Below, piece by piece: positions 12,223 to 48,641 of a stretch of DNA of 64,000 nucleotides; the first letter of the stretch is position 1; every line of letters begins with the position of its first letter. Where the stretch lies: the IMG/VR virus record IMGVR_UViG_3300023179_004149, positions 186,001 through 250,000 of that record; one strand, 5' to 3'. A program made the position numbers and the translations under genes. The notes below the pieces were generated by a model. That model was given only the letters and a program-made list of their open reading frames with translations, ran no database searches and was not told where the DNA came from.

Positions 12223-13332
12223 ATGAATCAATTAGATTTAGATTACCAAGCCCTATTAAAAGACATTTTAGAAAATGGCGTGGAGAAAAAAGATAGGACT
12301 GGTACAGGTACATTGAGTGTTTTTGGAAGACAAATTAGGTATAAGTTTAAAGACGGAAAATTTCCCCTGCTCACAACAAAAAAAATGTACTTCAAAGGCA
12401 TCGTAACCGAACTTTTATGGTTTTTACGTGGAGATACAAACATCAAGTACCTTGTGGATAATGACTGTCATATCTGGGATGGTGATGCGTATAAGAGGTA
12501 CTCAGATCATTTTAAAGGTTATGAAGATGTTATGTCAAAAGAGGTATTTATTCACGAAATAAAAACTAATCCTGAGTTTGCAGCGAAGTGGGGCGAATTA
12601 GGACCTATTTACGGTAAGCAGTGGAGAGATTGGACATACTTTACAAGAGAAAATAAGAAAGACATAAAAGGTATTGATGAGTCAGTTTGCGGCGTTGATA
12701 TATGGGATGGTTATGCTTATCTCAGAACTTTAGACCAAATGCAAAAATTAATCAGCGACTTAAAAACAAATCCAGATTCAAGAAGATTGATGGTAAATGC
12801 CTGGAATGTCGGAGAAGTAGATGAAATGGTTTTGCCCCCATGTCATTATGGGTTTCAGGTTTATACCAGAGAACTAACTTGGGAAGAACAAGTTCAATGG
12901 GTTATGAAAAATACTGATGTTGAATGGGAGAATCTCTACATAGTTGAAGAAATTGCTAAACCGTCTACACCGAAACGAGCAATCTCCTTAATGTGGAATC
13001 AGCGCAGTGTTGACACACCATTGGGGTTACCTTTTAATATAGCGTCATACGCCCTATTGTTGGAGATTGTTGGTAAAATGGTTAATATGGTACCAGATGA
13101 ATTGATTGGAACTTTGGGTGATACTCACATCTACCTTAATCAGGTTGATGGTGTTAAAGAACAGTTAACAAAAGAGCCATATGAATTACCAACACTTAAG
13201 ATGGGTAAATCTGATGATTTTTATAAGTCATTATCTGATGATTTATCATTATTAGGTCATTTAGATCCGTCAGACTTCACGATTGAAAATTATCAATCAC
13301 ATCCAACAATAAAATACCCCCTAAGTAATTAA
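12223..13332 (+). CDS. thyA: Thymidylate synthase
   Basis: DRTGTGT, ELLWFLRG, GPIYGKQWR, LPPCH, QRSVD, GLPFNIASY, DTHIY. Continuous frame, no intron. Confidence 0.97.
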   Translation: MNQLDLDYQALLKDILENGVEKKDRTGTGTLSVFGRQIRYKFKDGKFPLLTTKKMYFKGIVTELLWFLRGDTNIKYLVDNDCHIWDGDAYKRYSDHFKGYEDVMSKEVFIHEIKTNPEFAAKWGELGPIYGKQWRDWTYFTRENKKDIKGIDESVCGVDIWDGYAYLRTLDQMQKLISDLKTNPDSRRLMVNAWNVGEVDEMVLPPCHYGFQVYTRELTWEEQVQWVMKNTDVEWENLYIVEEIAKPSTPKRAISLMWNQRSVDTPLGLPFNIASYALLLEIVGKMVNMVPDELIGTLGDTHIYLNQVDGVKEQLTKEPYELPTLKMGKSDDFYKSLSDDLSLLGHLDPSDFTIENYQSHPTIKYPLSN

Positions 13333-22508: not shown

Positions 22509-24953
22509 ATGAATAAACACACAGACGAGCAATTAAAATTTATCAACTTTAAAGAGTCCGATTCCATTGTTCTTTCAGCCACAGCTGGTTCAGGTAAAAC
22601 CTATTCCGCTGTGGGTAGGTTAAATCGAATGATTGCTGACGGTGTGGATCCAACTAAAATCATTTTCTTTAGCTTTACTAATGACGCCGTAAACGAATTA
22701 CGGGCCAGAATTAAGCACGATGTGAAGATAACAACCATACATAGCTTCACCAGTACTTTGTTAGGTAAAATGGGCTTATTTAAGCCAATTGTAACGTTTT
22801 ATGACTTCACTAACTGGTATAAGGAAAAATACAAACCCCATGCTAAGGACCCGATGAAGATTAAAATGGAATATGCCAACACAGTAGATAAATTCTATGA
22901 AGAGGGTAACCAAATATCATCAACCTTCTCAGCTTATAAACTACAGTCGTCAGATGGACTTAAAGTACTAAAACCAAAATACTATGATGAGTACGCCGCT
23001 TTCATCAAAGAAACCAAAAGCCGCGATTTCTCAGATATGTTGATCGACACTGAGAAATATAGCCGAGATCCCAAATACAAACAATTTTTTGAAGGTACAT
23101 ATGAATATATATTCATCGATGAATATCAAGATACCTCAACCTTACAGATGAAAATTTTGTTGACCATCAAAGCTAAACAATATCACTTGATAGGTGACAA
23201 AAATCAATGTATTATTACCAATCAAAGAGTTATAACCGATAATGGTAGTACCTTAATACAAAATTTGAAAGTTGGTGATAATGTATTATCAGCCATGGGG
23301 TGTGGTCGAACAGGTTATAAAAAAGTTATTAATATTAATAAGGGTGTAATATCAGGCGGTATTGTTGAATTAAAAACTAAGAGCGGTAGAACAATAAAAA
23401 CCACACCAAACCACACACATTTTGCACAATTTACGTTCGATAACGAAAATAAATTTTTGGTATACTTAATGTATAAGCGTGGTTATGGCTACCGAATTGG
23501 AAAAACGGAAATTTACCCTAAGCGAAATGTAAAAAATAATTCTGATAGGTTTGGATTTAAGTTTCGCTTAAATCAGGAACACGGTGATAAAATATGGATA
23601 CTAAATTCATATAAAACATTGAATGATGCGTTTTTGGCTGAGGAAACATACTCGTTAGGCTACGGTATACCAACAATGTGTTTTGTTGCCCGAAGCGGAC
23701 AGAGTCAAGACCAGATTGATAATTTATTTAACAACATCGACACTGAATCACGTGCTACCAAACTATTACATGATTTATCCTATTCAATATTACAACCACA
23801 TTTTGTTCCTAGATCACGTAGCGGAGCCGCTACCAATGTAACAGTCACTATGTGTATGGATGGTAGACGTAAAAAACCATTACACACTTTGGAGGTAAAT
23901 GGTATCTCTGATAAGATTAAAGAATATTTTGAGAATAATGGATATTTGACGACAAATAATGGGAAAAATACGGGTTGGCGAATACGTAAACAATCAACTG
24001 ATTTGAGTCAAATCATGAGTTCGGTCACATTAATATCTGATAGTATTAATTTGATATTAAAAACTAAATTGGTTGATAAAACTTATTTACAATTACCTGC
24101 GGCTCAGGTCGTACCTGGTATGTCAGTAATGGTATGGGATGGAGATAAAATTATCATTGACGAAGTCGTTGAAAGAAATAACGTTGCTGTAGATTCAAAC
24201 GATATTTATGATGTTGATGTTGAAGACTCACACAATTTGATTGTAAATGATATTTTCACACATAATTCGATTTATGGCTTCTCGGGCGCCAACTGTGAGG
24301 CCATTGAAAACCTCCTGAAAAAGAATTATAAGACCATTGAGATGAGTTTAACCAAAAACTTTAGATCACATAAAAAAATCGTAGAAAACTCAAACAAATA
24401 TAGTTCTTTGGTTGCAATACCACATCACGAAGAAGATGGGTATATACACTCTGATTTGATCGATGAAGATACAATGTATGACATGATGGATGATGGTAAA
24501 CCATTGGCCATACTAGCACGCACAAACAACGTGATTAAAGAAATTGAAAAACATTGTCTTAAGAAAAAAATAAATATGAGATATTTTAACTATATCTCAC
24601 CATCCGATATAGAAAAGATAAGAGAGGGTAAGATAAACCCATCCTTGAAGAAAAGACTTGAGGCTGTAGCACCGTATCACGGTAACACATTTGGTTTATT
24701 AAAATTCATTGAAGATAACAAAGACTCCGATGTATTCGTTACATCCATACATAAAAGTAAAGGTCGTGAGTTTCCTAGATGTATTATTATAAACTCAGTC
24801 GATCCTGAACTATTAGTGGATCAACCTTATGACTTTGAGGATTATAGCTTTATAAGGGATGATGGAGATATTGACATCGAAGCCCGTAATGTACACTATG
24901 TGGCAGTTACGCGTCCGAAAGAAGAATTATACTTTTTGATATATGAGAAATAA
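22509..24953 (+). CDS. UvrD/Rep-family SF1A helicase, intein-containing
   Basis: ATAGSGKT, IFIDEYQD, GDKNQ|SIYGFSGA split by the intein, KNFRS, SIHKSKGREF, HYVAVTRPK. Confidence 0.92.
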   Translation: MNKHTDEQLKFINFKESDSIVLSATAGSGKTYSAVGRLNRMIADGVDPTKIIFFSFTNDAVNELRARIKHDVKITTIHSFTSTLLGKMGLFKPIVTFYDFTNWYKEKYKPHAKDPMKIKMEYANTVDKFYEEGNQISSTFSAYKLQSSDGLKVLKPKYYDEYAAFIKETKSRDFSDMLIDTEKYSRDPKYKQFFEGTYEYIFIDEYQDTSTLQMKILLTIKAKQYHLIGDKNQCIITNQRVITDNGSTLIQNLKVGDNVLSAMGCGRTGYKKVININKGVISGGIVELKTKSGRTIKTTPNHTHFAQFTFDNENKFLVYLMYKRGYGYRIGKTEIYPKRNVKNNSDRFGFKFRLNQEHGDKIWILNSYKTLNDAFLAEETYSLGYGIPTMCFVARSGQSQDQIDNLFNNIDTESRATKLLHDLSYSILQPHFVPRSRSGAATNVTVTMCMDGRRKKPLHTLEVNGISDKIKEYFENNGYLTTNNGKNTGWRIRKQSTDLSQIMSSVTLISDSINLILKTKLVDKTYLQLPAAQVVPGMSVMVWDGDKIIIDEVVERNNVAVDSNDIYDVDVEDSHNLIVNDIFTHNSIYGFSGANCEAIENLLKKNYKTIEMSLTKNFRSHKKIVENSNKYSSLVAIPHHEEDGYIHSDLIDEDTMYDMMDDGKPLAILARTNNVIKEIEKHCLKKKINMRYFNYISPSDIEKIREGKINPSLKKRLEAVAPYHGNTFGLLKFIEDNKDSDVFVTSIHKSKGREFPRCIIINSVDPELLVDQPYDFEDYSFIRDDGDIDIEARNVHYVAVTRPKEELYFLIYEK
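23208..24266 (+). mobile_element. Intein (353 aa) in helicase motif III
   Basis: Starts CIITNQ, ends ...HNLIVNDIFTHN followed by Ser. Contains TPNH block B and a central VYLM...YRIGKT nuclease-like insert. Confidence 0.92.
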
Positions 24954-25036: not shown

Positions 25037-26008
25037 TTAGTATCTAAGTATCTGTTTCATTCTTGCAATCTGTTCGTTAAGAGCTTTAGACGTTTCGTCT
25101 TCTTCTTCAGGTTCATCATTTTCCATCATATCTTTACCCTCTTCTTCAGTTTCTTCGTACATACCGCATTCATCACATGGTTCACCTTCTGTGTGCATGT
25201 GATCCATACCCATTTCGTGCATATCGTGGTGCATGTCAGACATATCCATACCCTCATCTTCCATACCTGGTTCTTCATTCATCCAAGTTTCATCAACCCA
25301 AGATTCGTCAGTCGGTAAATAACCTTCTTCGTAAACCTTACCTTTAGCGCCAGCTCTTAAAGCCATTTCACTTTGCCCATCTTCTTTCATATTAGGTAAA
25401 CCACTCTTCTTTCCACCAACCTCAGTTGATCCTTTAGGTGATGCTGTTGCTTTTTTAGCTTGATCAAAAGGCTTTTCAACTGGTTTTTTAACCTGTGTTT
25501 CTTGTGGTTTTCCCTTACCACCCGTTTTAGCTTGTTCAAATGGTTTTTCTGTTGGTTTTGGTGCTCTTGTCTCTTGCTTAGTAGCTGTACCGCTCGTAGA
25601 ATTGGCCATTTTTTCTTCACCTGGATTGCTCACGGTTGAAACCTTATGCATATTAACAGTGTGACCCTCGCCAGCTTTAATACCATTCAAAACGTGCTTA
25701 GTTGCTGCGTTTTTAACGACCTCGTCTTCTTTAAGGCCAGGTTTTTTAATACCTGGGTTAGAAACCGTCTTTTGGGACTTTAAATCACCACCCTTCAAAC
25801 CCGATTTAACGTGCTTAGTTGCTGCATTTTTAATACTATCACCACCAGTTTTAGGTAATGAGTTTTCATCTGCCATTGAAGCGTGAGATTCGCCGTCAAC
25901 TTCTTTCATACCTTTTACAATATGTTTTGTGGCGTCTTTGGCAACCGTACCTGCGGTTCCAGGAGTTTTTGTCGCTGGCTTAGGTGCCTGTGTTTTTTTA
26001 GTATCCAT
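25037..26008 (-). CDS. Low-complexity repeat protein ending in leader-like helix
   Basis: Repeats (K)NAATKHV x3, VSNPG x2, EKPF(E/D)QAK x2, an acidic tail, and C-terminal ALNEQIARMKQILRY. Confidence 0.75.
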   Translation of the reverse strand: MDTKKTQAPKPATKTPGTAGTVAKDATKHIVKGMKEVDGESHASMADENSLPKTGGDSIKNAATKHVKSGLKGGDLKSQKTVSNPGIKKPGLKEDEVVKNAATKHVLNGIKAGEGHTVNMHKVSTVSNPGEEKMANSTSGTATKQETRAPKPTEKPFEQAKTGGKGKPQETQVKKPVEKPFDQAKKATASPKGSTEVGGKKSGLPNMKEDGQSEMALRAGAKGKVYEEGYLPTDESWVDETWMNEEPGMEDEGMDMSDMHHDMHEMGMDHMHTEGEPCDECGMYEETEEEGKDMMENDEPEEEDETSKALNEQIARMKQILRY

Positions 26009-26102
26009 AATTTTTTATAAAATTTATTGTTTATATTCAATAAATAGTTTCATTTTAAGGAAAAATCAATAATATTTATTAATAACTAAAAAAGATTCGA
26101 CC

Positions 26103-26255
26103 ATGTATTATTTTTATTTCAGAAATGACCAGAAAAAAGAAAAAATCAACACCACAAACGAATTCACATCTCGTTTAGCGGCAGCCAAGTACTTTGCAAC
26201 CATTAAAAAAATGCAACTTAAAGAATTCTTAAGGTTATTTTCTGTTTCTAAATAA
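26103..26255 (+). CDS. Small hypothetical protein (50 aa, not in ORF track)
   Basis: MYYFYFRNDQKKEKINTTNEFTSRLAAAKYFATIKKMQLKEFLRLFSVSK, with TATTTATT upstream. Confidence 0.6.
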   Translation: MYYFYFRNDQKKEKINTTNEFTSRLAAAKYFATIKKMQLKEFLRLFSVSK

Positions 26256-26296
26256 CTTTCGATTCACATCATATATTTATCTGAAAACCATAGAGA

Positions 26297-26530
26297 ATGT
26301 ACGCTAAAGTATTGAAGCACCTTAATTCCATTAGAGAAGAATTACAAGATATAATCGACGGACAATCAGATAGATTATTAGAATCAACAAAATCCACCCA
26401 ATTACAGGATGATATACAAAGAAATGTAATTGACACAATAACCTCAGCAATAGAAGAGATAGATAACATTATTGACGCTATCGATAGTGATGACTATAAT
26501 GAAACTGATGATTACAACGAAAATTTTTAA
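26297..26530 (+). CDS. Small acidic coiled-coil protein
   Basis: Heptad-like acidic ORF, TATTTATC upstream. Confidence 0.65.
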   Translation: MYAKVLKHLNSIREELQDIIDGQSDRLLESTKSTQLQDDIQRNVIDTITSAIEEIDNIIDAIDSDDYNETDDYNENF

Positions 26531-26533
26531 CCC

Positions 26534-26791
26534 ATGAACCAAAACGAATACGTGGAAGAAGAAGAAATAACCGAAGAAAGTGGATCTGATTCTGGTTCAT
26601 TTGGTAACCCAAAAGGCGCAGGTAAAGTGTGGGATTCTGGCACCAAACGTGGTAAAGCCAACCCAATATCAAATCACGGCGAATGGGAGTCGGGTGTAAC
26701 AAGAGGCCGCGCCAACCCAGTTAAAACCATGGGCGAAGCCCTGGATAATGAATTAAATGAAATGAAAAAGTGGATGACTAAGTTAGATTAA
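26534..26791 (+). CDS. Small protein with two W(D/E)SGxxRGxANP repeats
   Basis: WDSGTKRGKANPI and WESGVTRGRANPV, C-terminal ELNEMKKWMTKLD. Confidence 0.7.
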   Translation: MNQNEYVEEEEITEESGSDSGSFGNPKGAGKVWDSGTKRGKANPISNHGEWESGVTRGRANPVKTMGEALDNELNEMKKWMTKLD

Positions 26792-26802
26792 TCTCCACTT
26801 TT

Positions 26803-27375
26803 TCATTTATTTTCACCTGCGGCGTATTTCACACCCATTATTGTACCAATAATACTGAATGAGTTGGTTAATAATATACCAAACATATTAGACCACGCCG
26901 ATTCCAATAACTTAGTATCGTAATGGTTTACCATGGCAAATACGTACAAACCAGTGGTAACAACACCAACACCAAGAACCACAATCAAAGCCACACGGAC
27001 AATTAATCCGATCAACTCAAATTGTGCCCTTTTCTGATAACTATCCAAATCCTCAACCGCAGCATCCCTCAATTGCTCAGCTTCAAATTTAGCATCCTGG
27101 GCCTCAGTTAAAGCAGCTTTTAATTTATTCATTAACCCAATATTTTCATCCTGGGCTTTGGTTAAGTCGATGTTCTGACTCTGTATCTTTTTGGTAATCT
27201 CAAGGCGTTTTTTTCTTGACTCCGTATCCAAACGCTTAGCCTCATCAAGATACGCCTTGAATTCCTCATCTGAATCCTCCTGGATCAGCTTTAATATATT
27301 ACCCTCAAGAGCAATTCTCTTTGATTTAAAAATCTCCAATAGTTGCTGCTTGGTTTCTTTATTTAAATTAATCAT
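26803..27375 (-). CDS. Coiled-coil membrane protein in two-component operon
   Basis: Coiled-coil N-part and two C-terminal TM segments, coupled to the response regulator stop. Confidence 0.75.
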   Translation of the reverse strand: MINLNKETKQQLLEIFKSKRIALEGNILKLIQEDSDEEFKAYLDEAKRLDTESRKKRLEITKKIQSQNIDLTKAQDENIGLMNKLKAALTEAQDAKFEAEQLRDAAVEDLDSYQKRAQFELIGLIVRVALIVVLGVGVVTTGLYVFAMVNHYDTKLLESAWSNMFGILLTNSFSIIGTIMGVKYAAGENK

Positions 27376-27812
27376 TATTTATATATCTTAAAAGGTGCTG
27401 TTCTATTTTTATATTTTGGGAAATCCTTTCTAAACTCTTCTAACCTGGGCTCAATCTCATCTGATTTTATTATCCAAAATTGCGCACCTGCCTTAACCGC
27501 CTTTGCTTGTTCCTCTGGCTCGTTACTCGATGATATAATACCAATAACAACGTTATTACCATGTTCAAAATTGATTCTTCTTACTAATTCTATACCATCA
27601 AACGATGACCCTATAATGTTTAAGTCCACAAATACACATTCGGGCCTCGATGTTAATTCTTTATATTTTGTTTCAAATAATTTTTCGGCATCATCTGCAC
27701 TATTTATCGACTCTAACGTTAACGTTATATCTAATAAACTACAAGCATCCTCAAATACCAGGTGGAATAAATCCTCGTCATCCACCAAAAGGATCGATTC
27801 AATCATGTTCAT
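27375..27812 (-). CDS. Single-domain response regulator (REC/CheY-like)
   Basis: ILLVDDED, VFVDLNI (phospho-Asp), DGIELV, IISSS, conserved Lys in WIIK. Confidence 0.92.
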   Translation of the reverse strand: MNMIESILLVDDEDLFHLVFEDACSLLDITLTLESINSADDAEKLFETKYKELTSRPECVFVDLNIIGSSFDGIELVRRINFEHGNNVVIGIISSSNEPEEQAKAVKAGAQFWIIKSDEIEPRLEEFRKDFPKYKNRTAPFKIYK

Positions 27813-27814
27813 TT

Positions 27815-29575
27815 TTACTTTAATTTAATTTTCATTTTTGTACCTATCTTATTTTTTTCACATGTGAGAACAAAACCATGTTCTTCCAATATTGCCATGC
27901 ATATATTTAAACCAAGACCTGAGCCAGGCTCCTTCTGTTCTTTTTTCCTCGTGTATGGTTTTGATAACTGTTCAAGATCGGCCTGTTCAATACCTCTACC
28001 GTTATCCTGAATTATCATATCACCATTCTCCATATAAATCTTTACATATTTAGTATTGGAATCATTATATTTTAAACCATTCCTAATTAAGTTATCGATA
28101 GCCGTACAAAACAACGATTCATTAACTTCTGTGGTTACCAAATCATCAATCACCACCTGACTAACATAAGCGGTATTAGATAAATATTTTTTTAATATCT
28201 CTTTTAAATTACATTCAGTCTTTGTTAATACAGCATCCTTTTTTACCAGGTTGGTGAACTCATAAACGCCCCTGTAAACCTTTTGGGTGTGTTCCAAACC
28301 CTCTTTGATTAACTTTAACGGAGCCTCTAACTTTAATTTAGCCGTTATTTCTGGATTAAGTCTTCTTTCCAATGATGAAACACCTCTCGGTATATAAGTA
28401 TTGATGCCAGAATGCATATCATGTCTTAATATCTTTGCGGCGTGTTCGAGATATGTATTCTTTTTTTCTAATTCCTGGGTGTTTTTAATAACATCACTAA
28501 TATCATACCTTATTGACATGAATCCAGTTAAATCACCCCATTCGTCAAATTCGGCTTTGATATTGGTGTCTACGTAGTAAATTTCACCGTTTTTAGCCCT
28601 ATTTGTCACAATAGATGACCATATTTTCTTATCCTTAACGGTTTTTTTGTACATCTCCGCCCAGAACTCTTTAGAATGCTCCCCAGAATTAACAATATGA
28701 TGATCCTTGCCAATCGCTTCTTTAGACTTCCAACCAGAAACCTCCTCAAATCTTTTATTAACATATGTAATTTTACCATGCTTATCCGTTTTTGAAACCA
28801 AAGCGGCAACATTGATAAACTTCTCAAGATCTTTGGTTCTTTTTTGCTCCAAAACATTTTCTTTAACGGAATAAGCAAATGAATATAATGAAGATAATAA
28901 GTGAGCAAAATCTATCTCCGTATCTGTCCAGGTGCGCTGTGTGAAACTTTCAATGCAGATTACACCAATAATATTACCTTTATATATGATAGGAACATCC
29001 AACATCGATTTAACACCCAGTGGTTTTAAATAAACCTCTTTAAAACAAATTGTGGCTGGATGCGTTTCTGCATTGTGAGCCACAACAATATTATCGTTTT
29101 CCAACGCCCTAAAATAAGGTTCAAAATCTTTTCTATATAATACTGCATCAGATTCCCATCTATTTTCGTGAGCCAAATATAATTGTTCACAATAGATCGA
29201 ATTCTTCTTATTATCCTCATATAACCAAATAGAACACCTATCCGCATCAATCGAATCCGCAACGCTCTCGGTTAATTCCTTAGCACCCTGTGAAGTATTA
29301 CCCTCATAAAATAATGGATTATGTGACTGGCCTATTAAAACCCTACTAAGCTTTTCCTTATATTCTTTTTCCTTTTTAATCAATTTGGCGTTAGCCATAT
29401 ATTCTCTCGCCATACCACCGAACACAGGTACGATGAATAAAATAGATATAAACTCAGCCCAACGAGTTGTTGGAGTTGATTGAAAGATACCCAATAAGAC
29501 ATTGATCTTTACATAAAAAAATATGAATAATATTAGAACAGCGAACCAGAAACTAATTTTGGGTAATCCTATCAT
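27815..29575 (-). CDS. Sensor histidine kinase (TM-GAF-PAS-HisKA-HATPase)
   Basis: N-terminal TM helices, GAF (SMLDVPI...IGVIC.E), PAS/PAC (ITYVNKRF...NRAKNGE), RHD His box, NLIRNGLKY, DNGRGI, GSGLGL. Confidence 0.92.
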   Translation of the reverse strand: MIGLPKISFWFAVLILFIFFYVKINVLLGIFQSTPTTRWAEFISILFIVPVFGGMAREYMANAKLIKKEKEYKEKLSRVLIGQSHNPLFYEGNTSQGAKELTESVADSIDADRCSIWLYEDNKKNSIYCEQLYLAHENRWESDAVLYRKDFEPYFRALENDNIVVAHNAETHPATICFKEVYLKPLGVKSMLDVPIIYKGNIIGVICIESFTQRTWTDTEIDFAHLLSSLYSFAYSVKENVLEQKRTKDLEKFINVAALVSKTDKHGKITYVNKRFEEVSGWKSKEAIGKDHHIVNSGEHSKEFWAEMYKKTVKDKKIWSSIVTNRAKNGEIYYVDTNIKAEFDEWGDLTGFMSIRYDISDVIKNTQELEKKNTYLEHAAKILRHDMHSGINTYIPRGVSSLERRLNPEITAKLKLEAPLKLIKEGLEHTQKVYRGVYEFTNLVKKDAVLTKTECNLKEILKKYLSNTAYVSQVVIDDLVTTEVNESLFCTAIDNLIRNGLKYNDSNTKYVKIYMENGDMIIQDNGRGIEQADLEQLSKPYTRKKEQKEPGSGLGLNICMAILEEHGFVLTCEKNKIGTKMKIKLK

Positions 29576-29676
29576 CAGTATAAATTTTTTATAATAAATA
29601 GTCGTGAAATCTTCATTAATACCGAACTATTTATAATAAATTATTTATAAACAAGATCGATAACCAACTCCATAAA

Positions 29677-29858
29677 ATGAATTATCTCATCGGATTTAAA
29701 CAAGACGATAACGATGATGCAAGATTAAACGAATATGTAAGACAACGTGGTAATAAATGGGTTGTGTTATCCAGAAAGGGAAAGTTCTCGGAACCCATGA
29801 CACCAAATCAGATGCCGTAAATCAATTAAAAGCTATAGAAGCAAATAAACACGCCTAA
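29677..29858 (+). CDS. Small protein spanning a -1 frameshift at G_GGA_AAG (not in ORF track)
   Basis: Frame 0 stops at 29820. The -1 frame from 29778-29784 gives ...LNEYVRQRGNKWVVLSRKGKVLGTHDTKSDAVNQLKAIEANKHA, ending 1 nt before the next ATG. Confidence 0.6.
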
Positions 29859-29859
29859 A

Positions 29860-30840
29860 ATGAAAAAAGTAAATTTAAACGAACAAATCGTTAGAATGAG
29901 ATCCATTATGGGGCTCAATGAATCAAAAAGAACCGAAGCAGATGCCCAGAGAATACTCGCTGGCGTTGAAAACGCTGAGACTATAGTAAAACAATTCGCC
30001 CAGGGTGACCAATCAAAAGACCAAAAGAATATACCCATTATGGCATCCATATATAAAAATTTTAACTATACCGATGTTAAAAATATAGTGGATGTTATGA
30101 ACGATTATAATGATTTGGTTACTAAAAATAGGGTTAAACCTATTCAAATAGCCAAGGGTGTTTTATCAATAGGGGATAAATCCTTTAATGATTTTATTAG
30201 GTTTTCTGAATATATTCACGGTGAAAAGAACAAATATGCGGCACCTCAAAAAGGTTCAAGTGTTGATGCTGATTTCATCTCTAATAAAAAACCTATGTGG
30301 TCGGGTAATAATATCGATATCTATGAAGGTGATGAGGTTGGTAAATGTATCGCATACACCATGGGTGGTTTAACTGGTAGAGGTTATAGCTTCTGTATCG
30401 GTCAACCAGGTAATACCGTGTATCAATCTTACAGAGACACCAAAGTTTCATCATTCTATTTCGTGGTGGATAAAAACCACTTTAAAACCAATGAAGACGG
30501 TAGTGTAAATCTTGATGATCCATTACACATTGTGGTGTTCGATAATACACAACACGGTATAGAACTTACAGATGCTAACAACACAACTGGTAAAATCGCT
30601 GAACCATTTGGTACCAATTCAGATATATATGTTGATTATCTTAAAAATAAAGGCGTTCCAGTTGATCAACTCATCAATAAACCAAAAACCGATCAGGAAA
30701 GAAAAGAAGATGAATTGTTAGGTAGACCCAATCCAAGCCTTGAATGGTTTGTAAAATTACCGATTGATTTAAAATCAAAATACATAGGTAGAGGACACCA
30801 ATTAACAAACGATCAATTCGATTATCTCATAGGTAAATAA
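29860..30840 (+). CDS. Leader-tagged hypothetical protein
   Basis: Starts MKKVNLNEQIVRMRSIMGLNE. Contains GRGYSFCIG...YFVVD. Confidence 0.75.
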   Translation: MKKVNLNEQIVRMRSIMGLNESKRTEADAQRILAGVENAETIVKQFAQGDQSKDQKNIPIMASIYKNFNYTDVKNIVDVMNDYNDLVTKNRVKPIQIAKGVLSIGDKSFNDFIRFSEYIHGEKNKYAAPQKGSSVDADFISNKKPMWSGNNIDIYEGDEVGKCIAYTMGGLTGRGYSFCIGQPGNTVYQSYRDTKVSSFYFVVDKNHFKTNEDGSVNLDDPLHIVVFDNTQHGIELTDANNTTGKIAEPFGTNSDIYVDYLKNKGVPVDQLINKPKTDQERKEDELLGRPNPSLEWFVKLPIDLKSKYIGRGHQLTNDQFDYLIGK

Positions 30841-39016: not shown

Positions 39017-41602
39017 TTACTCTAATGCGTTTAATACTTTTTCCTTTATTGTTTGAACACGATTATGATTCGATTTCGCCATCTTTTCAACAATCAAAGC
39101 CCTCAACCGATCAGCCACCTTAGGGTCCTTCAATCTATATACCTTTAATAACGAATCGTACTTACCCAATAAAGATTGATCCTCATCCGATATACCAATC
39201 AAATTATAAAACACATACCCATTAACCAATTGTAAAACCCTATCCTTACCAATTTGATCCTTTAGTTTGATGAACCGTTGAACAATCTCATCATCTGATT
39301 CCTTCTTAACATTTAATTCTTTATATAATGGTTCCAATTCAGCGCCAACCAAATCAAAATACATCTCCCTCAACTCAGCTGGAAACTTATTAACAACAAA
39401 CGGCGATATGGTCTTAACTATCGTATCGGTTAACACATGGACAATATGTTTGATAACATCAAACCCCTTGTTTTTGTTAAATAAACCAAATAACACATCG
39501 TATCGACCATGATTTATCAATTCCCTGACATAAATGTCTGTGTTCATGTTATTAATCGTTCTACCATGATACAAGACACCAAAGGCATCCTCAACAAGAA
39601 CATCCAAAGATTGTGACCAATATGATTCCATCCCCTTCAACACACCCCTTTCATTACGATACTTTAACTCATACTCCGTTAACCACCCAATCACAAAATT
39701 CTTAAACTTCTGATTGAACACCCCATAATAAGGCCCAGTAAAATGACAATAAATACCAGAGGCAAATCTACCAAGAGGATCCTTAATATTCCAATCACCC
39801 TCCTTTATTAAATAAAAAACAAAACTATTATCCCTTATCATATTGCCAACACCCGCACCATAACCTTCACCACCATCATCAATAGTTGATTTGATCATCG
39901 TTTGCTTTATATCCTTAATACCAGAAAGATTCTCACATGTGCTAAAATGATCACTATCTCCCATATTTGCAATATCATGCGAATGCCTGGATATAACAGC
40001 ATACATCTTACCTTCACCACCAGCCCTGGTCATCGAATCCAAATAACTCGTGTATCTTTTCAATAAACCAACATCATACTTTTGCAATAACTTGGTTAAT
40101 TTAACCTCCTGGTTACTCTTCTCATCCTTCACCTTGTTACCGTCAAAATCAACCAACACAAAACCATTATCGGCAATAACACGATCAATATCATGCCTTA
40201 ACTTATCACTAATATTAACATCCAAATTTAAAGTCGGTGTTTTCCTGGTCGGCGTAATCATCTTCCCAGTATCGAGATCATAATATAAACGATATACATT
40301 CTTACCAAATAAATTATCCATATTAGCATCAAAACGCTTTTGATAGGCCCTGGCTTGCTTGGATAAATTCAACTCAATGGCCTCACCCAACCACATCACC
40401 CCCCTCATGCGGGAAACCTCTTCATTTAATTTATTTAACGTCTCTTCTGCAAATTCTAATGACTCTTTCTCATTATCATCAAGCTCTCTATTAATACCAC
40501 TTATAACTTTTCGTATTATATCCTCTTCCCACCTAAACGCATACAACACATACGATAACAAACTCTCACCACGCCTAATAATTCTCTTATCATATATTAT
40601 TTTCATTAAGTTATAATTAATTATCATCTTAATGTTTTTATCCGTTATGTTATTGGCCATATCAGGGTCTTCAATTAATTTGGTATGTAATGATTGCAAA
40701 TAAACTTTCTTTAACTCATCTCGCAACCCATCAAAATCAAAAAACCAATTATAATACCTCTTAACCAAAACCTTGCTACGTTCCAAAGGCATCGAGTTTA
40801 ACTCATCCATCTGTTTCTTATCATAAATTACATCATTTGATAATAACCTGTTTTCTAATGAGTCGTGTGTTCCAATAACACCTTTCTTATTTATATTAAT
40901 AAATAAGGTGTTTATATCAACAGACTTCATATCACCATCAATCTTATTAAGATCATAGATAACCGAACCATGTAACGTATTATCCCAATCCCAAACACCT
41001 GAAACATTAACACCATTATAGCCATTCCACTCCATAATCCTGGTGGAAAATGAAGCCGAACTACTGGCTTGCGTTTTATTATACATCGAATTAAAATCAC
41101 TCGCGGCTTGTTTTAACATATTGATAAACTCACGATACTTTGGAACCTTTAAACCCAAATAACTTAAATTATTAACAACAACCAAATACCGCTTGCTTAT
41201 ATCGCCATGCCCATATAAAAAACTATAAAATATATCATTCAACTCCTTCAATGTGTTAAATAACCACTTACCTTGTTCATTGCTCTTTACTCGATATAAA
41301 TTTTTATAGAAATCCATATTAACCCTATAAACACTATCACCAACCTGAATCAACCCAGACATATCCTTAAAAGCAGATCCATATTTTTTATCATAATCAG
41401 CTTTATCCCTTAACTTATAAGTTGAAAAATACATACCCGAACCAAAGTGACCCGTGCCCCTACCTTGCATTCTCCATATGTTATCAGAACCATACGGTTT
41501 TAAATTAGATAAATTAACACTACCCGAATGATAGTTGTAATCGGCCTCAATTAATAAAACCATTTTTTTTATTTGTTGTAACTCAGAAAGTAACTTATCC
41601 AT
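39017..41602 (-). CDS. Fused two-cassette leader-tagged polyprotein, N-module ART-like
   Basis: N-leader LLSELQQIKKMV.LIE, YHSG...GHFGSGMYFST, and a second internal leader LNKLNEEVSRMRGVMWLGE at 40391-40438. Confidence 0.75.
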   Translation of the reverse strand: MDKLLSELQQIKKMVLLIEADYNYHSGSVNLSNLKPYGSDNIWRMQGRGTGHFGSGMYFSTYKLRDKADYDKKYGSAFKDMSGLIQVGDSVYRVNMDFYKNLYRVKSNEQGKWLFNTLKELNDIFYSFLYGHGDISKRYLVVVNNLSYLGLKVPKYREFINMLKQAASDFNSMYNKTQASSSASFSTRIMEWNGYNGVNVSGVWDWDNTLHGSVIYDLNKIDGDMKSVDINTLFININKKGVIGTHDSLENRLLSNDVIYDKKQMDELNSMPLERSKVLVKRYYNWFFDFDGLRDELKKVYLQSLHTKLIEDPDMANNITDKNIKMIINYNLMKIIYDKRIIRRGESLLSYVLYAFRWEEDIIRKVISGINRELDDNEKESLEFAEETLNKLNEEVSRMRGVMWLGEAIELNLSKQARAYQKRFDANMDNLFGKNVYRLYYDLDTGKMITPTRKTPTLNLDVNISDKLRHDIDRVIADNGFVLVDFDGNKVKDEKSNQEVKLTKLLQKYDVGLLKRYTSYLDSMTRAGGEGKMYAVISRHSHDIANMGDSDHFSTCENLSGIKDIKQTMIKSTIDDGGEGYGAGVGNMIRDNSFVFYLIKEGDWNIKDPLGRFASGIYCHFTGPYYGVFNQKFKNFVIGWLTEYELKYRNERGVLKGMESYWSQSLDVLVEDAFGVLYHGRTINNMNTDIYVRELINHGRYDVLFGLFNKNKGFDVIKHIVHVLTDTIVKTISPFVVNKFPAELREMYFDLVGAELEPLYKELNVKKESDDEIVQRFIKLKDQIGKDRVLQLVNGYVFYNLIGISDEDQSLLGKYDSLLKVYRLKDPKVADRLRALIVEKMAKSNHNRVQTIKEKVLNALE

Positions 41603-41605
41603 ACA

Positions 41606-42850
41606 CTATTTTAATTTATCAAACTCTCTATCATAAGAAGATTTTTCATCCAACGGATTCTTTAGATGATTGGTTACATAATCCTCAAATCGGAAAAAAG
41701 CACCATTAATTTTATTCAAAAGATCTTCTGAAATATCTGGCGTTATTTTTAAAGGTTCATTAACCTCATTCAAACCCATAACCTTTTTTATTTGATTAAG
41801 CCCCTCATCTAACATATCTGAACTAATACCTAAAGTATTTAAATACTTATTAAAATCCATATCATACACTTCATACCATTTAATGTTGTTACTCAAATAT
41901 AAAGAATAACTATCTGGTAAATAGGTCATCAAAAACCTAGCATCATCAATATCCATGTTAAAATCCATTATAACATACACATACCCCAAACCAGCATAAT
42001 CTTCCCAATAATTCTCACTACCAACTTGTGCAAAACACCAATTACTATAACAACCCAATTGCTGCATAGCCTCATAATCATTAACCTTGATTACCAGAAC
42101 ATCGTTTTTATCATATACCAAATCAGCATCAAGATTCGGCAATAAATCCAAAACATGTTTACGACCCGTTTCAGCGCCATCACCAATATAACTCATGGTC
42201 TTACTCAAATGATCAAAACCCGCAACAATATCTTTAAAACTCCTACCACTACGAAATAGTTTAGGCAACATCTCATCGTGTTTTTTCTTAGGTAAAGCCT
42301 GTAATATTTTATTAATAACCCTCAACCCCTCATACACTTTTTTAAAATTATATGAAATAAACTGTTGGTAATTCGGGTCGGCTGTATCAATGTTATATAT
42401 ATATTCTTTAATTGGTTTCATCATATTACGCTTAATAATATCTGATAATTTACCCCAACTTTTAACCAAATAACTCCTTTCCTTTAACATCTCATATAAA
42501 GACATTACATGAAATCTATTATCCTGGGTTTCATATTTGTAGTCGGTTAAATTACCTGGAACAGGAAATAATTGTTTATCATACACTCTTACTAAATCGT
42601 AAAAATCCGCAACAATATCCATATTCCTCTCAGTATATTTACTCTGGTCAGATTCAAACCTATTCATCTGATAATAAAAATCAGTAACCAACTTCGTAAA
42701 ATTATTACCGTTTGTAAGATCAACAATAGCTTCCTTGACACGAGGCTCTAACTTACCCGAATTAAAATAAACTTTATCGGCTAATTGAACATTCTCATTC
42801 AAACCCATCATTACCCTCATACGGAAAACTTGCTCGTTTAATTTATTCAT
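41606..42850 (-). CDS. Leader-tagged hypothetical protein
   Basis: MNKLNEQVFRMRVMMGLNE, LGCYSNWCF module, internal LDEGLNQIKKVMGLNE near the C-terminus. Confidence 0.75.
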   Translation of the reverse strand: MNKLNEQVFRMRVMMGLNENVQLADKVYFNSGKLEPRVKEAIVDLTNGNNFTKLVTDFYYQMNRFESDQSKYTERNMDIVADFYDLVRVYDKQLFPVPGNLTDYKYETQDNRFHVMSLYEMLKERSYLVKSWGKLSDIIKRNMMKPIKEYIYNIDTADPNYQQFISYNFKKVYEGLRVINKILQALPKKKHDEMLPKLFRSGRSFKDIVAGFDHLSKTMSYIGDGAETGRKHVLDLLPNLDADLVYDKNDVLVIKVNDYEAMQQLGCYSNWCFAQVGSENYWEDYAGLGYVYVIMDFNMDIDDARFLMTYLPDSYSLYLSNNIKWYEVYDMDFNKYLNTLGISSDMLDEGLNQIKKVMGLNEVNEPLKITPDISEDLLNKINGAFFRFEDYVTNHLKNPLDEKSSYDREFDKLK

Positions 42851-43453
42851 TTATACTCCACTAAAACTTAATTGGTTATTATCATTTATATATAAATCAA
42901 CTGACCCCATATCACGTGATGCTTTCATTAATATATTCTCGTCCTCATCATCATAACCCCTATCAAAAAAACCAGCACCGTGACCATTACGTGTCAACCA
43001 AAAGTCATGACCAAGTTGTTCAGCACCAAACTCATTAATCGCCCTATGAATTAAATCCTCACCACATAACTGAATGAATTTCTTAATACCTATATAAGCA
43101 TCAATTAACGAATCTGACTCAATATCTTCACGACTGAATGATACAATACCCTTATTATTCAACTGCGATGTTAATCTAATTAATTTATCCAATTCGGTAT
43201 CATCCTCATCCTCATCATCGTCGTCATAAACACTATCATCACCTTGTTCATCTCTCAAAGATTCCTCCTCAGTCCATAATGCCGCTTCAATATACCCCAT
43301 CAATATCTTATTTATAATATCGGTAGATATATCAGATTCGTCTAATACACTACCATCATCCTGAATATCCTTGGCAAATTGATACCTACCCGAATTTTCA
43401 GATATACCCATTATCGCCCTCATGCGGGACACTTGTTCATTTAATTTATTCAT
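42851..43453 (-). CDS. Leader-tagged hypothetical protein (GHDFWLTRNGHGAGF motif)
   Basis: Start reassigned to MNKLNEQVSRMRAIMGISE at 43453. Confidence 0.75.
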   Translation of the reverse strand: MNKLNEQVSRMRAIMGISENSGRYQFAKDIQDDGSVLDESDISTDIINKILMGYIEAALWTEEESLRDEQGDDSVYDDDDEDEDDTELDKLIRLTSQLNNKGIVSFSREDIESDSLIDAYIGIKKFIQLCGEDLIHRAINEFGAEQLGHDFWLTRNGHGAGFFDRGYDDEDENILMKASRDMGSVDLYINDNNQLSFSGV

Positions 43454-43466
43454 AACGATATCAATT

Positions 43467-44081
43467 TTATTTTGTTTCATAATTATCTGGTACCAGGTTA
43501 CTAAGATGCTCCACAAACGTATCAAACTCGAAAAATTTGGGATTGTATTTATATGGTACCTCTTTACCATCTGGACGTAAAACAACAACTTTATAATCAC
43601 TAAATTTACTATGAGTATCTCTAAATCCAGATATAATATCCACAATATAGGAATAATGATTCGTATCAGTTAATATAATTCTGAATTTGATCCTATCTGG
43701 TGTATTCTCGAATATATTAACCTTCACCACAACAGCTTTAACGTCACCAATATTTATTGTTTTACCCACATATGAATTAATTAGATCCTCTGAAAATATA
43801 CCAGATACATACCAGTGCTTATTCCCTGATTTATCAAGAATTGGTTTAAAATCACCAAACTCCAAATCTATAGGTTCACCAGAAACATCAACATCCGCAA
43901 CATCCGATTTTTTAAAATTACCAAATCTGCCAACTTTATCATCTGGCTTTAACTTCTTCCTGGTAGTGTCAAGATTCTTGGTCTTATTCCAATACCAATC
44001 AGAATCATCCCAAGATTCACTTAACCCCATCATCCGCCTGATGTTTTGAATCTCCTCATTTAATGTTTGTTTCTGTTTCAT
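43467..44081 (-). CDS. Leader-tagged hypothetical protein
   Basis: MKQKQTLNEEIQNIRRMMGLSE. Confidence 0.75.
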   Translation of the reverse strand: MKQKQTLNEEIQNIRRMMGLSESWDDSDWYWNKTKNLDTTRKKLKPDDKVGRFGNFKKSDVADVDVSGEPIDLEFGDFKPILDKSGNKHWYVSGIFSEDLINSYVGKTINIGDVKAVVVKVNIFENTPDRIKFRIILTDTNHYSYIVDIISGFRDTHSKFSDYKVVVLRPDGKEVPYKYNPKFFEFDTFVEHLSNLVPDNYETK

Positions 44082-46631: not shown

Positions 46632-47303
46632 TTAGGCGAGTTCTAATGTTTCGCCCTTACTGGTAAATGAAGTTAACACATTATCAATTTTGAATGTGCG
46701 TAGGTCTTCTTTACGTAGGGTATCACGTATTATGTTTTTTGCTACAGTAAGGGGAGCGCTGGCGACTTTTTTATATTCGCCCTTTACTGTTGTTTCCTTG
46801 CTTACTTTTTTACCGAATATAAGCAAGTTATTTGTAGATGTGTTAAACCATAATACAGGGTTAAGTTTGATATTATTATTTTCCCTATCTGTTGGTTGTT
46901 GGTCGGTTTGTTTCATTTCGATTAATGCCGTAGGCAACAAATCCAAAATTTCGTTATATGGTTGGGTTGGGTTGGCAAATTTTTTCAGGTCGTATTTACC
47001 AAAATTGTGGCTCATTACCTTTTCTCTTAATACGTCCTTTATCGTATCAATATCGTAGCTATGTAGTGTTAAACTATCTTTGTTTAACATATTTTCATAG
47101 CTGATACCTATGTTAACCACGTAGTTAGCAAGTTCGGTGTTATCCGAATTATCGCTATTATAGTCCTTAATACTGATAAACTTTGCGCCCTTTACAGTTG
47201 TGGCGTCAATAAGTTTAAACAGGTCGGTACGACTTAAATTGGGATAGGCGGAAAGAATAGCCAAAATTGTTTGTTCCTGAATAGTGAATGTTTGTTGTAA
47301 CAT
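46632..47303 (-). CDS. Hypothetical protein
   Basis: Long ORF, start placed at MLQQTF. Confidence 0.7.
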   Translation of the reverse strand: MLQQTFTIQEQTILAILSAYPNLSRTDLFKLIDATTVKGAKFISIKDYNSDNSDNTELANYVVNIGISYENMLNKDSLTLHSYDIDTIKDVLREKVMSHNFGKYDLKKFANPTQPYNEILDLLPTALIEMKQTDQQPTDRENNNIKLNPVLWFNTSTNNLLIFGKKVSKETTVKGEYKKVASAPLTVAKNIIRDTLRKEDLRTFKIDNVLTSFTSKGETLELA

Positions 47304-48581: not shown

Positions 48582-48641
48582 GTTTGTTGAATTTAAAGTG
48601 CAAAGATAAGGCGGATATTTCAATCCGCCAAATCTTTTTTG

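What the first reader, a model, noticed from the sequence alone, without database searches (positions are those of the whole stretch)
26803..29600. Complete phage-encoded two-component system under a late-type promoter
Seen: a membrane histidine kinase (GAF+PAS, intact His, N and G boxes), a receiver-only response regulator with the phospho-Asp, and a coupled coiled-coil membrane protein, preceded by TATTTATT. There is no DNA-binding output domain, so the output is likely protein-protein, with the third gene as the obvious target. Complete pairs are uncommon in lytic phages. Inference: sensing of host state or superinfection to adjust lysis timing or exclusion.
Basis: partly seen in the sequence, partly recalled or inferred. 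Interest (0 to 1): 0.62.

Follow-up and report, generated by a model that had tools for sequence, protein, structure and literature searches.

The report
Phage phosphorelay wired to lysis-linked membrane protein
A 321-kb freshwater phage of Bacteroidota carries an intact sensor kinase, a stand-alone receiver and a phage-only membrane protein; this three-gene module recurs in hundreds of uncultured phages, where it usually sits beside the lysis genes, so it probably lets the phage time host lysis by an intracellular signal.

Summary
Window 26803-29575 (minus strand) has three tightly packed genes. They encode a membrane-anchored GAF-PAS histidine kinase (586 aa), a receiver-only response regulator (145 aa) and a 190-aa protein with a cytoplasmic coiled coil and a C-terminal two-helix membrane hairpin. 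All catalytic motifs are intact, and dN/dS against the nearest relative is 0.02-0.06.

This is not a stray host fragment. The same kinase-receiver-third gene order occurs in 88 of 92 related loci that carry the third gene, mostly with overlapping stop and start codons. The third protein has over 6,000 90%-identity clusters, all viral or metagenomic, and no Pfam or PHROG family.

Other phages fuse the same GAF lineage (57% identical to this kinase's GAF), or PAS-PAS sensors, directly to the third protein's coiled-coil/hairpin half. That marks the half as the pathway output. All six such fusions, and 24 of 42 cassette lineages, lie within 5 kb of endolysin or holin genes. In this genome the endolysin is about 108 kb away, but it shares the upstream motif CTATTTAT with the kinase operon.

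Best reading: a phosphorelay that gates or times lysis at the protein level. The function is inferred, not shown.

The parts
29594..29601 (-). CTATTTAT upstream motif, 18 nt before the kinase ATG.
   Evidence: Genome-wide, 25 of 47 occurrences lie within 70 nt upstream of a gene start in sense orientation, against about 4.3% expected by position. The motif is shared with the endolysin, a baseplate wedge gene and homing endonucleases. It is conserved upstream of the kinase only in the closest relative, L010.
27815..29575 (-). Sensor histidine kinase, 586 aa.
   Evidence: Pfam GAF, PAS and HATPase_c. H, N, G1 and G2 boxes conserved in 65 relatives. The CA domain aligns to HK853, KdpD and CpxA. 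dN/dS is 0.055 against L010.
29411..29575 (-). Kinase N-terminal membrane anchor (residues 1-55): two hydrophobic segments with a loop of about 8 residues.
   Evidence: Hydropathy scan. The loop is too short to be a periplasmic sensor (inference).
28880..29281 (-). GAF sensor domain (residues 99-232).
   Evidence: Pfam, 66 bits. Residues 76-238, which span it, are 57% identical to the GAF of P0150, which is fused directly to the third protein's C-part.
28493..28798 (-). PAS sensor domain (residues 260-361).
   Evidence: Pfam PAS, PAS_9, PAS_3 and PAS_4.
27818..28483 (-). Kinase core (residues 365-586): DHp helix with H385, and the ATP-binding domain.
27375..27812 (-). Stand-alone receiver (145 aa), with phospho-acceptor D63.
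   Evidence: Pfam Response_reg, 37 bits. D11, D12, E13, D63, S94-96 and K116 are invariant. Mean column identity across the family is 73%. dN/dS is 0.023. It is the only receiver in the genome.
27181..27375 (-). Third protein, N-part (residues 1 to about 65): small N-domain plus the start of the long helix. Proposed receiver-facing input module.
   Evidence: The sensor fusions P0150, P0172 and P0175 lack it: their match to the third protein starts at profile position 74 or 63. Profile positions 1 to about 100, which include it, are fused to a HisKA-HATPase core directly after a receiver gene in P0244-type proteins. Fold-together test of the receiver with residues 1-125: weak support, 0.36 against 0.00.
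26803..27180 (-). Third protein, C-part (residues about 66-190): coiled coil running into TM1 (about 121-149), a short acidic loop, then TM2 (about 164-182). Proposed membrane output.
   Evidence: AF2 model and hydropathy. The loop and TM2 stretch W-S-N-M-F-G-I-L-L-T-N-S-F-S-I-I-G-T-I-M-G is nearly invariant. It occurs fused to GAF or PAS sensors next to endolysins.

Best explanation
The three genes form one phage-specific signalling module that acts on the cell membrane and most likely sets or gates the time of host lysis.

Proposed mechanism:
1. The kinase is anchored in the inner membrane and reads an intracellular cue through its cytoplasmic GAF and PAS domains.
2. It autophosphorylates on H385 and passes the phosphate to D63 of the stand-alone receiver.
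3. The receiver has no DNA-binding domain. It acts by binding the cytoplasmic N-terminal part of the third protein.
4. This changes the state, probably the oligomerisation, of the third protein's coiled coil and two-helix membrane hairpin. The hairpin then acts as a regulated holin or antiholin-like element.

What is shown and what is inferred:
- Shown: intact motifs, purifying selection, conserved order and coupling, phage-only distribution, sensor-to-hairpin fusions, and linkage to lysis genes in relatives.
- Inferred: phosphotransfer, receiver binding to the third protein, the membrane effect, and whether the signal advances or delays lysis.
For: 1. The parts are intact and under strong purifying selection.

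2. The kinase core, receiver and third gene are collinear in 88 of the 92 related loci that carry the third gene. The receiver and third genes overlap by 4 or 1 nt in 72 of 88 loci. The kinase and receiver genes overlap in 64 of 88. Kinase length ranges from 188 to 718 aa (complete genes mostly about 295-718), so the sensors vary while the receiver and third gene stay constant.

3. The third protein is phage-only.
- It has over 6,000 clusters, all viral or metagenomic, and 258 representatives among 1.84 billion.
- In 185,579 species genomes there are only 8 hits, all MAG contigs from 8 different phyla.

4. Fusions tie the sensors to the third protein.
- P0150 is GAF plus the C-part, and its GAF is 57% identical (E 4e-71) to this kinase's GAF.
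- P0172 and L098-L101 are PAS or PAS-PAS plus the C-part. The PAS-PAS of P0172 is 36-47% identical to the PAS pair of a cassette kinase.
- P0244-type proteins are the N-part plus HisKA-HATPase, placed directly after a receiver gene.

5. The module is linked to lysis genes in relatives.
- In L007-L009 the order is lysozyme, PG-binding protein, ORF, holin (Phage_holin_4_1, 27.4 bits against a cut-off of 22.2), kinase, receiver, third.
- In 24 of 42 lineages (85% clusters) a lysin or holin-like gene lies within 5 kb, at varied positions on both sides.
- All 6 sensor fusions lie within about 2.3 kb of a GH19, lysozyme, glucosaminidase, PG_binding_1 or holin gene; five of the six within about 1.7 kb.
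- In five long relatives (116-294 kb) the single PG_binding_1 gene lies 1.7-4.1 kb from the cassette.

6. In this genome the kinase operon and the endolysin gene share the CTATTTAT upstream motif.

7. The fold-together test of the receiver with third protein residues 1-125 scored ipSAE 0.36 against a best control of 0.00.
- The verdict was 'weak support'.
- In calibration the mark was reached by 58 of 80 solved complexes and 2 of 110 mismatched pairs. Scores of 0.60 or under came from only 7 of those 80 solved complexes and from both mismatches that passed.
- The runs agreed in at least 96% of contacts, and the partner's pLDDT was at least 86.
Against: - In this genome the cassette is not near lysis genes. 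The endolysin homologue is at genome 386-856, about 108 kb away even if the record is circular. No Phage_holin_4_1 or PG_binding_1 match exists.
- 18 of 42 lineages show no recognisable lysin or holin within 5 kb, although only a few query families were used.
- Linkage among related phages is partly inherited synteny.
- The third protein has no sequence or fold similarity to any known holin, antiholin or spanin.
- TM2 is far more conserved than is usual for holins (my own knowledge). That could instead mean it binds a conserved host membrane protein.
- No expression data exist: no RNA run holds the region.
- The complex prediction is only weak.
Confidence: 0.55

Rival explanations
1. The module is a real phosphorelay with the third protein as output, but the output is not lysis. 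It acts on another membrane process. Candidates are superinfection exclusion, control of host membrane potential or transport, or binding and disabling a conserved host membrane protein.
For: - The cassette is unlinked from lysis genes in this jumbo lineage and in 18 of 42 lineages.
- The loop and TM2 stretch is nearly invariant across the family, which fits a fixed protein partner better than a self-assembling pore.
- There is no similarity to known holins.
Against: - All six one-component fusions sit by endolysin or holin genes.
- In five long genomes the only PG_binding_1 gene is within 4.1 kb, on either side.
- In L007-type phages the kinase start abuts the holin stop, in one operon.
Confidence: 0.22
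2. The kinase and receiver mainly interfere with host signalling, for example as a phosphate sink or by cross-talk with host two-component systems. The third gene is then only a co-transcribed membrane protein, not the receiver's target.
For: - Single-domain receivers can act as phosphate sinks (established knowledge of CheY-like proteins).
- The receiver surface is extremely conserved (73% mean column identity), which could reflect several partners.
- The complex test is only weak.
Against: - Direct fusions of the same GAF and PAS lineages to the third protein's C-part bypass the kinase and receiver altogether, and they keep the same genomic context.
- The N-part stays next to a receiver gene even when its C-part is replaced by a kinase core.
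- Stop and start codons of the receiver and third genes overlap in 72 of 88 loci.
Confidence: 0.1
3. The operon is a recent, non-functional or unexpressed fragment picked up from the host.
For: There are no expression data. The kinase and receiver domains are of bacterial type.
Against: - dN/dS is 0.02-0.06 with saturated dS.
- At least 536 related stretches occur in IMG/VR.
- The third gene has no cellular homologue.
- GC content is the same as the surrounding genome.
- The operon carries its own phage-type upstream motif.
Confidence: 0.02

Closest known systems
Classical two-component systems with single-domain (CheY-like) response regulators, such as CheA-CheY-FliM and DivJ/PleC-DivK
   Same: A HisKA-type kinase core with H, N, G1 and G2 boxes. 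A receiver with the acidic pocket, phospho-Asp, Ser/Thr and Lys. No DNA-binding domain, so the output must be protein-protein.
   Different: It is encoded by a lytic-type T4-like phage. The proposed target is a phage-only coiled-coil/membrane-hairpin protein with no known family. The Pfam HisKA model does not score on the DHp. The receiver is distant from solved ones: the best natural match is 3ilh at E 1.8e-5.
T4 lysis inhibition (holin T, antiholins RI and RIII)
   Same: A T4-like phage that appears to tie lysis to a signal through membrane proteins encoded with the lysis genes. This is resemblance by function, from my own knowledge of T4.
   Different: There is no sequence relation. T4 senses superinfection in the periplasm through RI, without phosphorylation. 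Here the sensors are cytoplasmic GAF and PAS domains and the signal passes through a His-Asp phosphorelay.
Bacterial LytSR/LytST two-component systems controlling the holin-like and antiholin-like Cid/Lrg proteins (PMC3507848)
   Same: A two-component system coupled to holin-like membrane proteins.
   Different: LytR/LytT acts by transcription through a DNA-binding domain, and the system is cellular. Here the receiver has no DNA-binding domain, the coupling would be post-translational, and the module is viral.
SpoIISA of Bacillus subtilis, a membrane-attached GAF-domain toxin proposed to act like a holin (PMC3057836)
   Same: A cytoplasmic GAF-type domain joined through a helix to transmembrane segments, in a protein whose expression disrupts the membrane. 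It is a close architectural analogue of the GAF-plus-hairpin fusion P0150.
   Different: SpoIISA has three N-terminal TM helices and a C-terminal GAF, and is controlled by an antitoxin. Here the order is reversed (sensor N-terminal, hairpin C-terminal). No homology was detected, and control is by ligand or phosphorelay.
Phage-borne histidine kinases in deposited genomes (PHROG families phrog_857, phrog_10912 and phrog_731)
   Same: The kinase and the receiver hit these PHROG families, so such domains are already recorded in phages.
   Different: Those families have no assigned role. The deposited phage collection holds no full-length relative of this kinase (best coverage 36%) and no relative of the third protein.

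Membership tests
Two-component histidine kinase (HisKA-type, class I) | ATP-binding HATPase_c domain with N, G1 and G2 boxes | tested here: met
   Pfam HATPase_c scores 54.3 bits against a cut-off of 26.4. The boxes are conserved in 65 relatives. The domain aligns to the CA domains of HK853, KdpD and CpxA.
Two-component histidine kinase (HisKA-type, class I) | DHp dimerisation helix with the phospho-accepting His in an H-box | tested here: inconclusive
   There is no Pfam HisKA hit. An H-box-like motif (R-H385-D-M-H-S-G-I-N-T-Y) is at least 98% conserved, and it lies at the expected distance before the stretch that aligns to HK853. Its role is inferred.
Two-component histidine kinase (HisKA-type, class I) | Autophosphorylation and phosphotransfer to the partner receiver | not testable with these tools
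   This needs a biochemical assay.
Response regulator receiver (CheY-like, stand-alone) | Receiver fold with acidic pair, phospho-Asp, Ser/Thr and Lys | tested here: met
   Pfam Response_reg scores 37.4 bits against a cut-off of 30.2. D11, D12, D63, S94-96 and K116 are invariant.
Response regulator receiver (CheY-like, stand-alone) | No effector domain | tested here: met
   The protein is 145 aa, and Response_reg is the only Pfam family found. Receiver length is 143-148 aa in 83 of 88 relatives.
Holin or antiholin | Small membrane protein with one to four TM segments, encoded in the lysis cassette | tested here: inconclusive
   It has two C-terminal TM helices. It is linked to lysis genes in 24 of 42 lineages and in 6 of 6 fusions, but not in this genome. 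It is atypical in having a 120-aa cytoplasmic N-terminal coiled coil.
Holin or antiholin | Membership of a described holin family by sequence or fold | tested here: not met
   There is no Pfam or PHROG hit, no PDB fold match at E of 0.001 or better, and only one uncharacterised homologue in BFVD.
Holin or antiholin | Permeabilises the membrane, or blocks a holin, at a set time | not testable with these tools
   This needs expression and lysis assays.
T4-type late promoter | Short AT-rich -10-only element upstream of late (structural and lysis) genes | tested here: inconclusive
   T4's TATAAATA is not enriched: 15 matches against 12.3 expected. A different word, CTATTTAT, lies in the right place in 25 of its 47 occurrences. 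It precedes the endolysin, a baseplate wedge gene and homing endonucleases, but also a ribonucleotide reductase. It was not found upstream of the capsid gene. Timing is unknown.

The most novel reading that the evidence does not exclude
The third protein founds a new, phage-only family of sensor-gated lysis effectors. Its conserved coiled-coil/two-helix hairpin either forms the membrane lesion or blocks it. The hairpin is switched post-translationally, either by a His-Asp phosphorelay (as here) or by a directly fused GAF or PAS sensor. On this reading, a large group of freshwater Bacteroidota phages decides when to lyse by reading a host metabolite, redox state or second messenger.
Probability: 0.4. 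Interest if true: 0.85.

Novelty: new variant of a known kind. Interest (0 to 1): 0.72.

Why it matters
Lysis timing sets burst size and phage fitness. The only well-understood signal-dependent control of it in lytic phages is T4 lysis inhibition. A phosphorelay that acts on a membrane protein of the lysis cassette, rather than on transcription, would be a new way for a virus to read the state of its host cell.

The module is abundant in lake and other freshwater metagenomes: over 6,000 protein clusters and at least 536 IMG/VR stretches. It could therefore shape how freshwater Bacteroidota populations turn over.

The modular wiring, with the same sensors joined either through a kinase and receiver or directly to the hairpin, makes a natural experiment in pathway evolution. 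It also offers a compact ligand-gated membrane switch for engineering. The 190-aa protein is a large family that no public family library describes.

Tried and rejected
- Megablast of 26000-30000 against 50,697 deposited phages found no match. tblastn of the kinase found only partial PAS or HATPase hits, at most 36% coverage. tblastn of the third protein found none.
- The ESM Atlas feature search only returned the protein's own viral clusters, under a meaningless automatic name, 'GLE1-like'.
- Foldseek of the third-protein model against the PDB found nothing at E of 0.001 or better. BFVD gave one uncharacterised homologue.
- TATTTATT (18 against 15.1 expected) and T4's TATAAATA (15 against 12.3) are not enriched in the window. 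The sigma-70 and terminator scans are at background: 20 against 20.7, and 2 against 2.3.
- The CTATTTAT motif is conserved upstream of the kinase only in the closest relative, 1 of 64 distinct upstream regions. It is specific to this phage lineage.
- The idea that the module is host-derived and recent was rejected.
- The idea that the N-terminal coiled coil is periplasmic, like a spanin, was rejected. It has no signal peptide, and its homologues are fused to cytoplasmic GAF and HisKA-HATPase domains.
- The small 62-66-aa two-TM ORF upstream of the kinase in relatives gave only sub-threshold Pfam hints: YgaP-like_TM at 17.7 bits and the T7 holin family at 16.4 bits.
- Expression: no RNA run holds the region. 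Read laying was therefore not used, because DNA contigs cannot show expression.
- Literature searches found no description of this cassette. The library is incomplete, so this is not proof of absence.
- The phylogeny of the kinase and receiver against Bacteroidota homologues was not done.
Full report
**What is there.** The window is bases 186001-250000 of a 320,934-bp IMG/VR virus record. It carries a T4-type Gp23 capsid gene at 1101-2756. Three ORFs lie head to tail on the minus strand: 27815-29575 (586 aa), 27375-27812 (145 aa) and 26803-27375 (190 aa).

- **Kinase.** Pfam finds GAF (residues 99-232), PAS (260-361) and HATPase_c (488-585) in the first ORF. HisKA does not score. An H-box-like motif around H385, and the N, G1 and G2 boxes, are present and conserved in 65 non-redundant relatives. 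The ATP-binding domain aligns to HK853, KdpD and CpxA. The first 55 residues hold two hydrophobic segments joined by about 8 residues. The protein is therefore membrane-anchored with no room for a periplasmic sensor, and sensing must be cytoplasmic or intramembrane (inference).
- **Receiver.** Pfam finds Response_reg in the second ORF. It has D11, D12, E13, D63, S94-96 and K116, all invariant in relatives. It has no output domain.
- **Third protein.** There is no Pfam or PHROG family. An AF2 model built on 16 homologues (mean pLDDT 82.7, pTM 0.36) shows a small N-domain, one helix from residue 37 to 149 that runs into the membrane, a turn, and a second membrane helix. Charge distribution and hydropathy favour both ends being in the cytoplasm.
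- **Coupling.** The receiver stop overlaps the third gene's start by one base. The kinase stop is 2 nt from the receiver start.

**Not a stray host fragment.**
- GC content matches the flanks.
- Against the closest relative (L010, a 346-kb contig with the same neighbours), dN/dS is 0.055, 0.023 and 0.024 for the three genes, with dS above 1.
- A word search with the third protein returns 6,042 clusters at 90% identity, all without a family name. Their contigs reach 362 kb.
- A profile search of 1.84 billion representatives finds a compact family of 258.
- IMG/VR holds at least 536 related stretches.
- Among one genome each of 185,579 prokaryote species there are only 8 hits. All are MAG contigs assigned to eight different phyla, which is the pattern of mis-binned phage DNA.
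- The 50,697 deposited phage genomes have no relative of the third protein. BFVD has a single uncharacterised one.
- Runs that hold the stretch are lake, pond and freshwater metagenomes.

**The module is conserved and the sensor varies.** In the 92 fetched loci that carry the third gene, the kinase core and the receiver lie directly upstream in 88.
- The receiver and third genes overlap by 4 or 1 nt in 72 of 88 loci.
- The kinase and receiver genes overlap in 64 of 88.
- Kinase ORF lengths run from 188 to 718 aa. The shortest ones are cut by contig ends, and complete genes are mostly about 295-718 aa. They carry GAF-PAS, PAS-PAS or no recognisable sensor, and some loci have two kinases.
- The receiver is the most conserved part, at 73% mean column identity. 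The third protein is 56%. In the third protein the loop and second membrane helix are nearly invariant.

**Fusions point to the output.** A few longer family members show how the parts connect.
- P0150 is a GAF domain followed by the third protein from about residue 74 onward. Its GAF is 57% identical (E 4e-71) to residues 76-238 of this window's kinase, and it lacks the kinase's membrane anchor.
- P0172, P0175 and four MAG-borne proteins (L098-L101) are PAS or PAS-PAS followed by the same C-part. The PAS pair of P0172 is 36-47% identical to the PAS pair of a cassette kinase.
- Four representatives (P0244, P0251, P0254, P0266) carry the first 100 residues or so of the third protein, followed by HisKA and HATPase_c. 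P0244 sits directly after a receiver gene, sharing a stop/start base.

The same sensor lineages are thus wired to the coiled-coil/hairpin half either through a kinase and receiver or directly. The N-terminal part stays with the receiver even when its membrane half is swapped out. This is the strongest evidence that the three genes form one pathway, with the hairpin as output and the N-part as the receiver-facing input.

A fold-together test of the receiver with residues 1-125 gave ipSAE 0.36 against a best control of 0.00, which the tool rates as weak support.
- In calibration the mark was reached by 58 of 80 solved complexes and 2 of 110 mismatched pairs.
- Scores of 0.60 or under came from only 7 of those 80 solved complexes, and from both mismatches that passed.
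- The runs agreed in at least 96% of contacts, and the partner's pLDDT was at least 86.

**Link to lysis.**
- In L007-L009 the gene order is Phage_lysozyme, PG_binding_1 protein, small ORF, holin, kinase, receiver, third, with the kinase start abutting the holin stop. The holin is Phage_holin_4_1 at 27.4 bits, over its cut-off of 22.2.
- I searched all loci with a handful of lysin and holin queries and collapsed them to 42 lineages (85% identity of the third protein). In 24 lineages such a gene lies within 5 kb, at offsets from -4972 to +2501. The linkage therefore survives rearrangement.
- All six sensor-hairpin fusions lie within about 2.3 kb of a GH19, lysozyme, glucosaminidase, PG_binding_1 or holin gene; five of the six within about 1.7 kb.
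- In five long relatives (116-294 kb) the single PG_binding_1 match of the whole contig is 1.7-4.1 kb from the cassette, downstream in two and upstream in three.
- In 18 distinct relatives a 62-66-aa two-TM ORF sits directly before the kinase. It has only sub-threshold resemblance to YgaP-like and T7-holin families.

**This genome is an exception.** Its endolysin homologue is at genome 386-856 (PHROG endolysin, E 2e-43). No Phage_holin_4_1 or PG_binding_1 match exists. The kinase and receiver are the only ones in the record. The closest jumbo relative has the same unlinked layout.

**Promoter claim.** TATTTATT and T4's TATAAATA are not enriched in the window. A scan of 178 upstream regions of the whole genome finds two motif classes.
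- **Bacteroidota type.** This is TTTG followed about 20 nt later by TAnnTTTG, the known promoter form of this phylum (established knowledge). The TAnnTTTG element occurs in 72 regions, and 24 carry an upstream TTTG-containing word (AATTTGGTG-like). They are dense at 47-64 kb of the window. It indicates a Bacteroidota host. The nearest cultured capsid relative, Flavobacterium phage immuto, is 42% identical, which agrees.
- **CTATTTAT.** Of its 47 occurrences in the genome, 25 lie within 70 nt upstream of a start in sense orientation, mostly 11-18 nt, against about 4.3% expected by position. It precedes the kinase operon (18 nt), the gene just downstream on the same strand (25037-26008), the endolysin, a baseplate wedge gene, at least six homing-endonuclease-like genes, and also a ribonucleotide reductase.

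That it is 'late' fits the endolysin and baseplate genes but is not shown. The motif is conserved upstream of the kinase only in the nearest relative.

**Mechanism, and how sure.**
- About 0.95: this is a functional, phage-specific three-gene module.
- About 0.7: the third protein is the output of the phosphorelay, reached through its N-part.
- About 0.55: the process controlled is lysis timing or gating.

The sign of the control (trigger or delay) and the ligand are unknown. The sensors are cytoplasmic, so the cue is an internal state of the infected cell. Superinfection could be sensed only indirectly.

The rivals are another membrane-directed role, interference with host signalling, and a dead fragment. 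Each is weighed in its own section.

**Compared with what is known.** The kinase and receiver are ordinary members of their superfamilies, with a divergent DHp. The output has no described family.
- In function the nearest systems are T4 lysis inhibition (no phosphorylation, periplasmic sensing) and bacterial LytSR control of Cid/Lrg (transcriptional) (PMC3507848).
- For the fusions, the nearest is the membrane-attached GAF toxin SpoIISA, which its authors suggested may act as a holin whose cytosolic domain regulates assembly (PMC3057836).
- Searches of the paper library found no description of this cassette. The jumbo-phage survey PMC7824862 discusses a different receiver-like domain that is never found with histidine kinases.

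I file it as a new variant of a known kind.

**Limits.**
- Nothing here is experimental and there are no RNA data.
- The lysis-linkage counts rest on a few query proteins and on loci of at most 8 kb per side.
- The lineages are related, so the counts are not independent events.

Noticed in passing
window 47000-64000, and genome-wide: Dozens of small genes are preceded by a bipartite motif: AAATTTGGTGG, then about 20 nt, then TAccTTTGCA, ending 15-25 nt before the ATG. This is the Bacteroidota -33 TTTG / -7 TAnnTTTG promoter form. TAnnTTTG occurs in 72 upstream regions of the genome. It points to a Bacteroidota host and probably marks the early genes.
   Followed up: partly
window 22509-24953 (+): A UvrD-like helicase (814 aa) is interrupted by an intein: Intein_splicing/Hint hits lie between the N- and C-terminal helicase halves. 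The same intein-bearing gene is present in the 346-kb relative L010.
   Followed up: no
window 1101-2756 (+): The Gp23-type major capsid protein is 551 aa, and Pfam and tblastn matches come in two pieces covering only about 60% of it. It probably has an insertion or extra domain.
   Followed up: no
L004, L005, L017, L021, L022, L026, L036, L038, L039, L046, L055, L064, L076, L084, L087, L088 and others, directly upstream of the kinase: A conserved 62-66-aa protein with two TM segments and a C-terminal F-C-P-S-K-W motif ends at the kinase start codon in 18 distinct relatives. It is holin-sized but has only sub-threshold Pfam hints. It is absent from this window.
   Followed up: partly
L006:5030-5554: A YceI-like protein (Pfam, 152 bits) is inserted between the kinase and the receiver in one 190-kb relative. 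A second YceI hit lies near the cassette in L091.
   Followed up: no
window 25037-26008 (-): A 323-aa low-complexity protein rich in K, E, G and M lies about 0.8 kb downstream of the third gene on the same strand, and has its own CTATTTAT motif 31 nt upstream. It has no Pfam or PHROG family.
   Followed up: no
window 8475-10934 (-) and 4261-8380 (-): The phage encodes a ClpB-like double-AAA+ chaperone (819 aa). Next to it are two large multi-domain glycosyltransferases of 717 and 661 aa.
   Followed up: no
window 40000-44000: GC skew is strongly negative here (-0.39 to -0.43), over two large minus-strand genes of unknown function (39017-41602 and 41606-42850) that have no Pfam hit.
   Followed up: no
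window 12223-13332 (+): The thymidylate synthase is 369 aa, but it matches the 266-position Pfam model end to end. It therefore carries about 100 extra residues as an insertion.
   Followed up: no
genome 4629-5525, 7708-8382, 47955-48782, 128404-129185 and 302478-303347 (outside the window): At least six homing-endonuclease-like genes (HNH and related) carry the same CTATTTAT upstream motif as the endolysin and the kinase operon. A 982-aa ribonucleotide reductase also has the motif. Its PHROG match comes in two stretches, and it may hold an insertion.
   Followed up: partly
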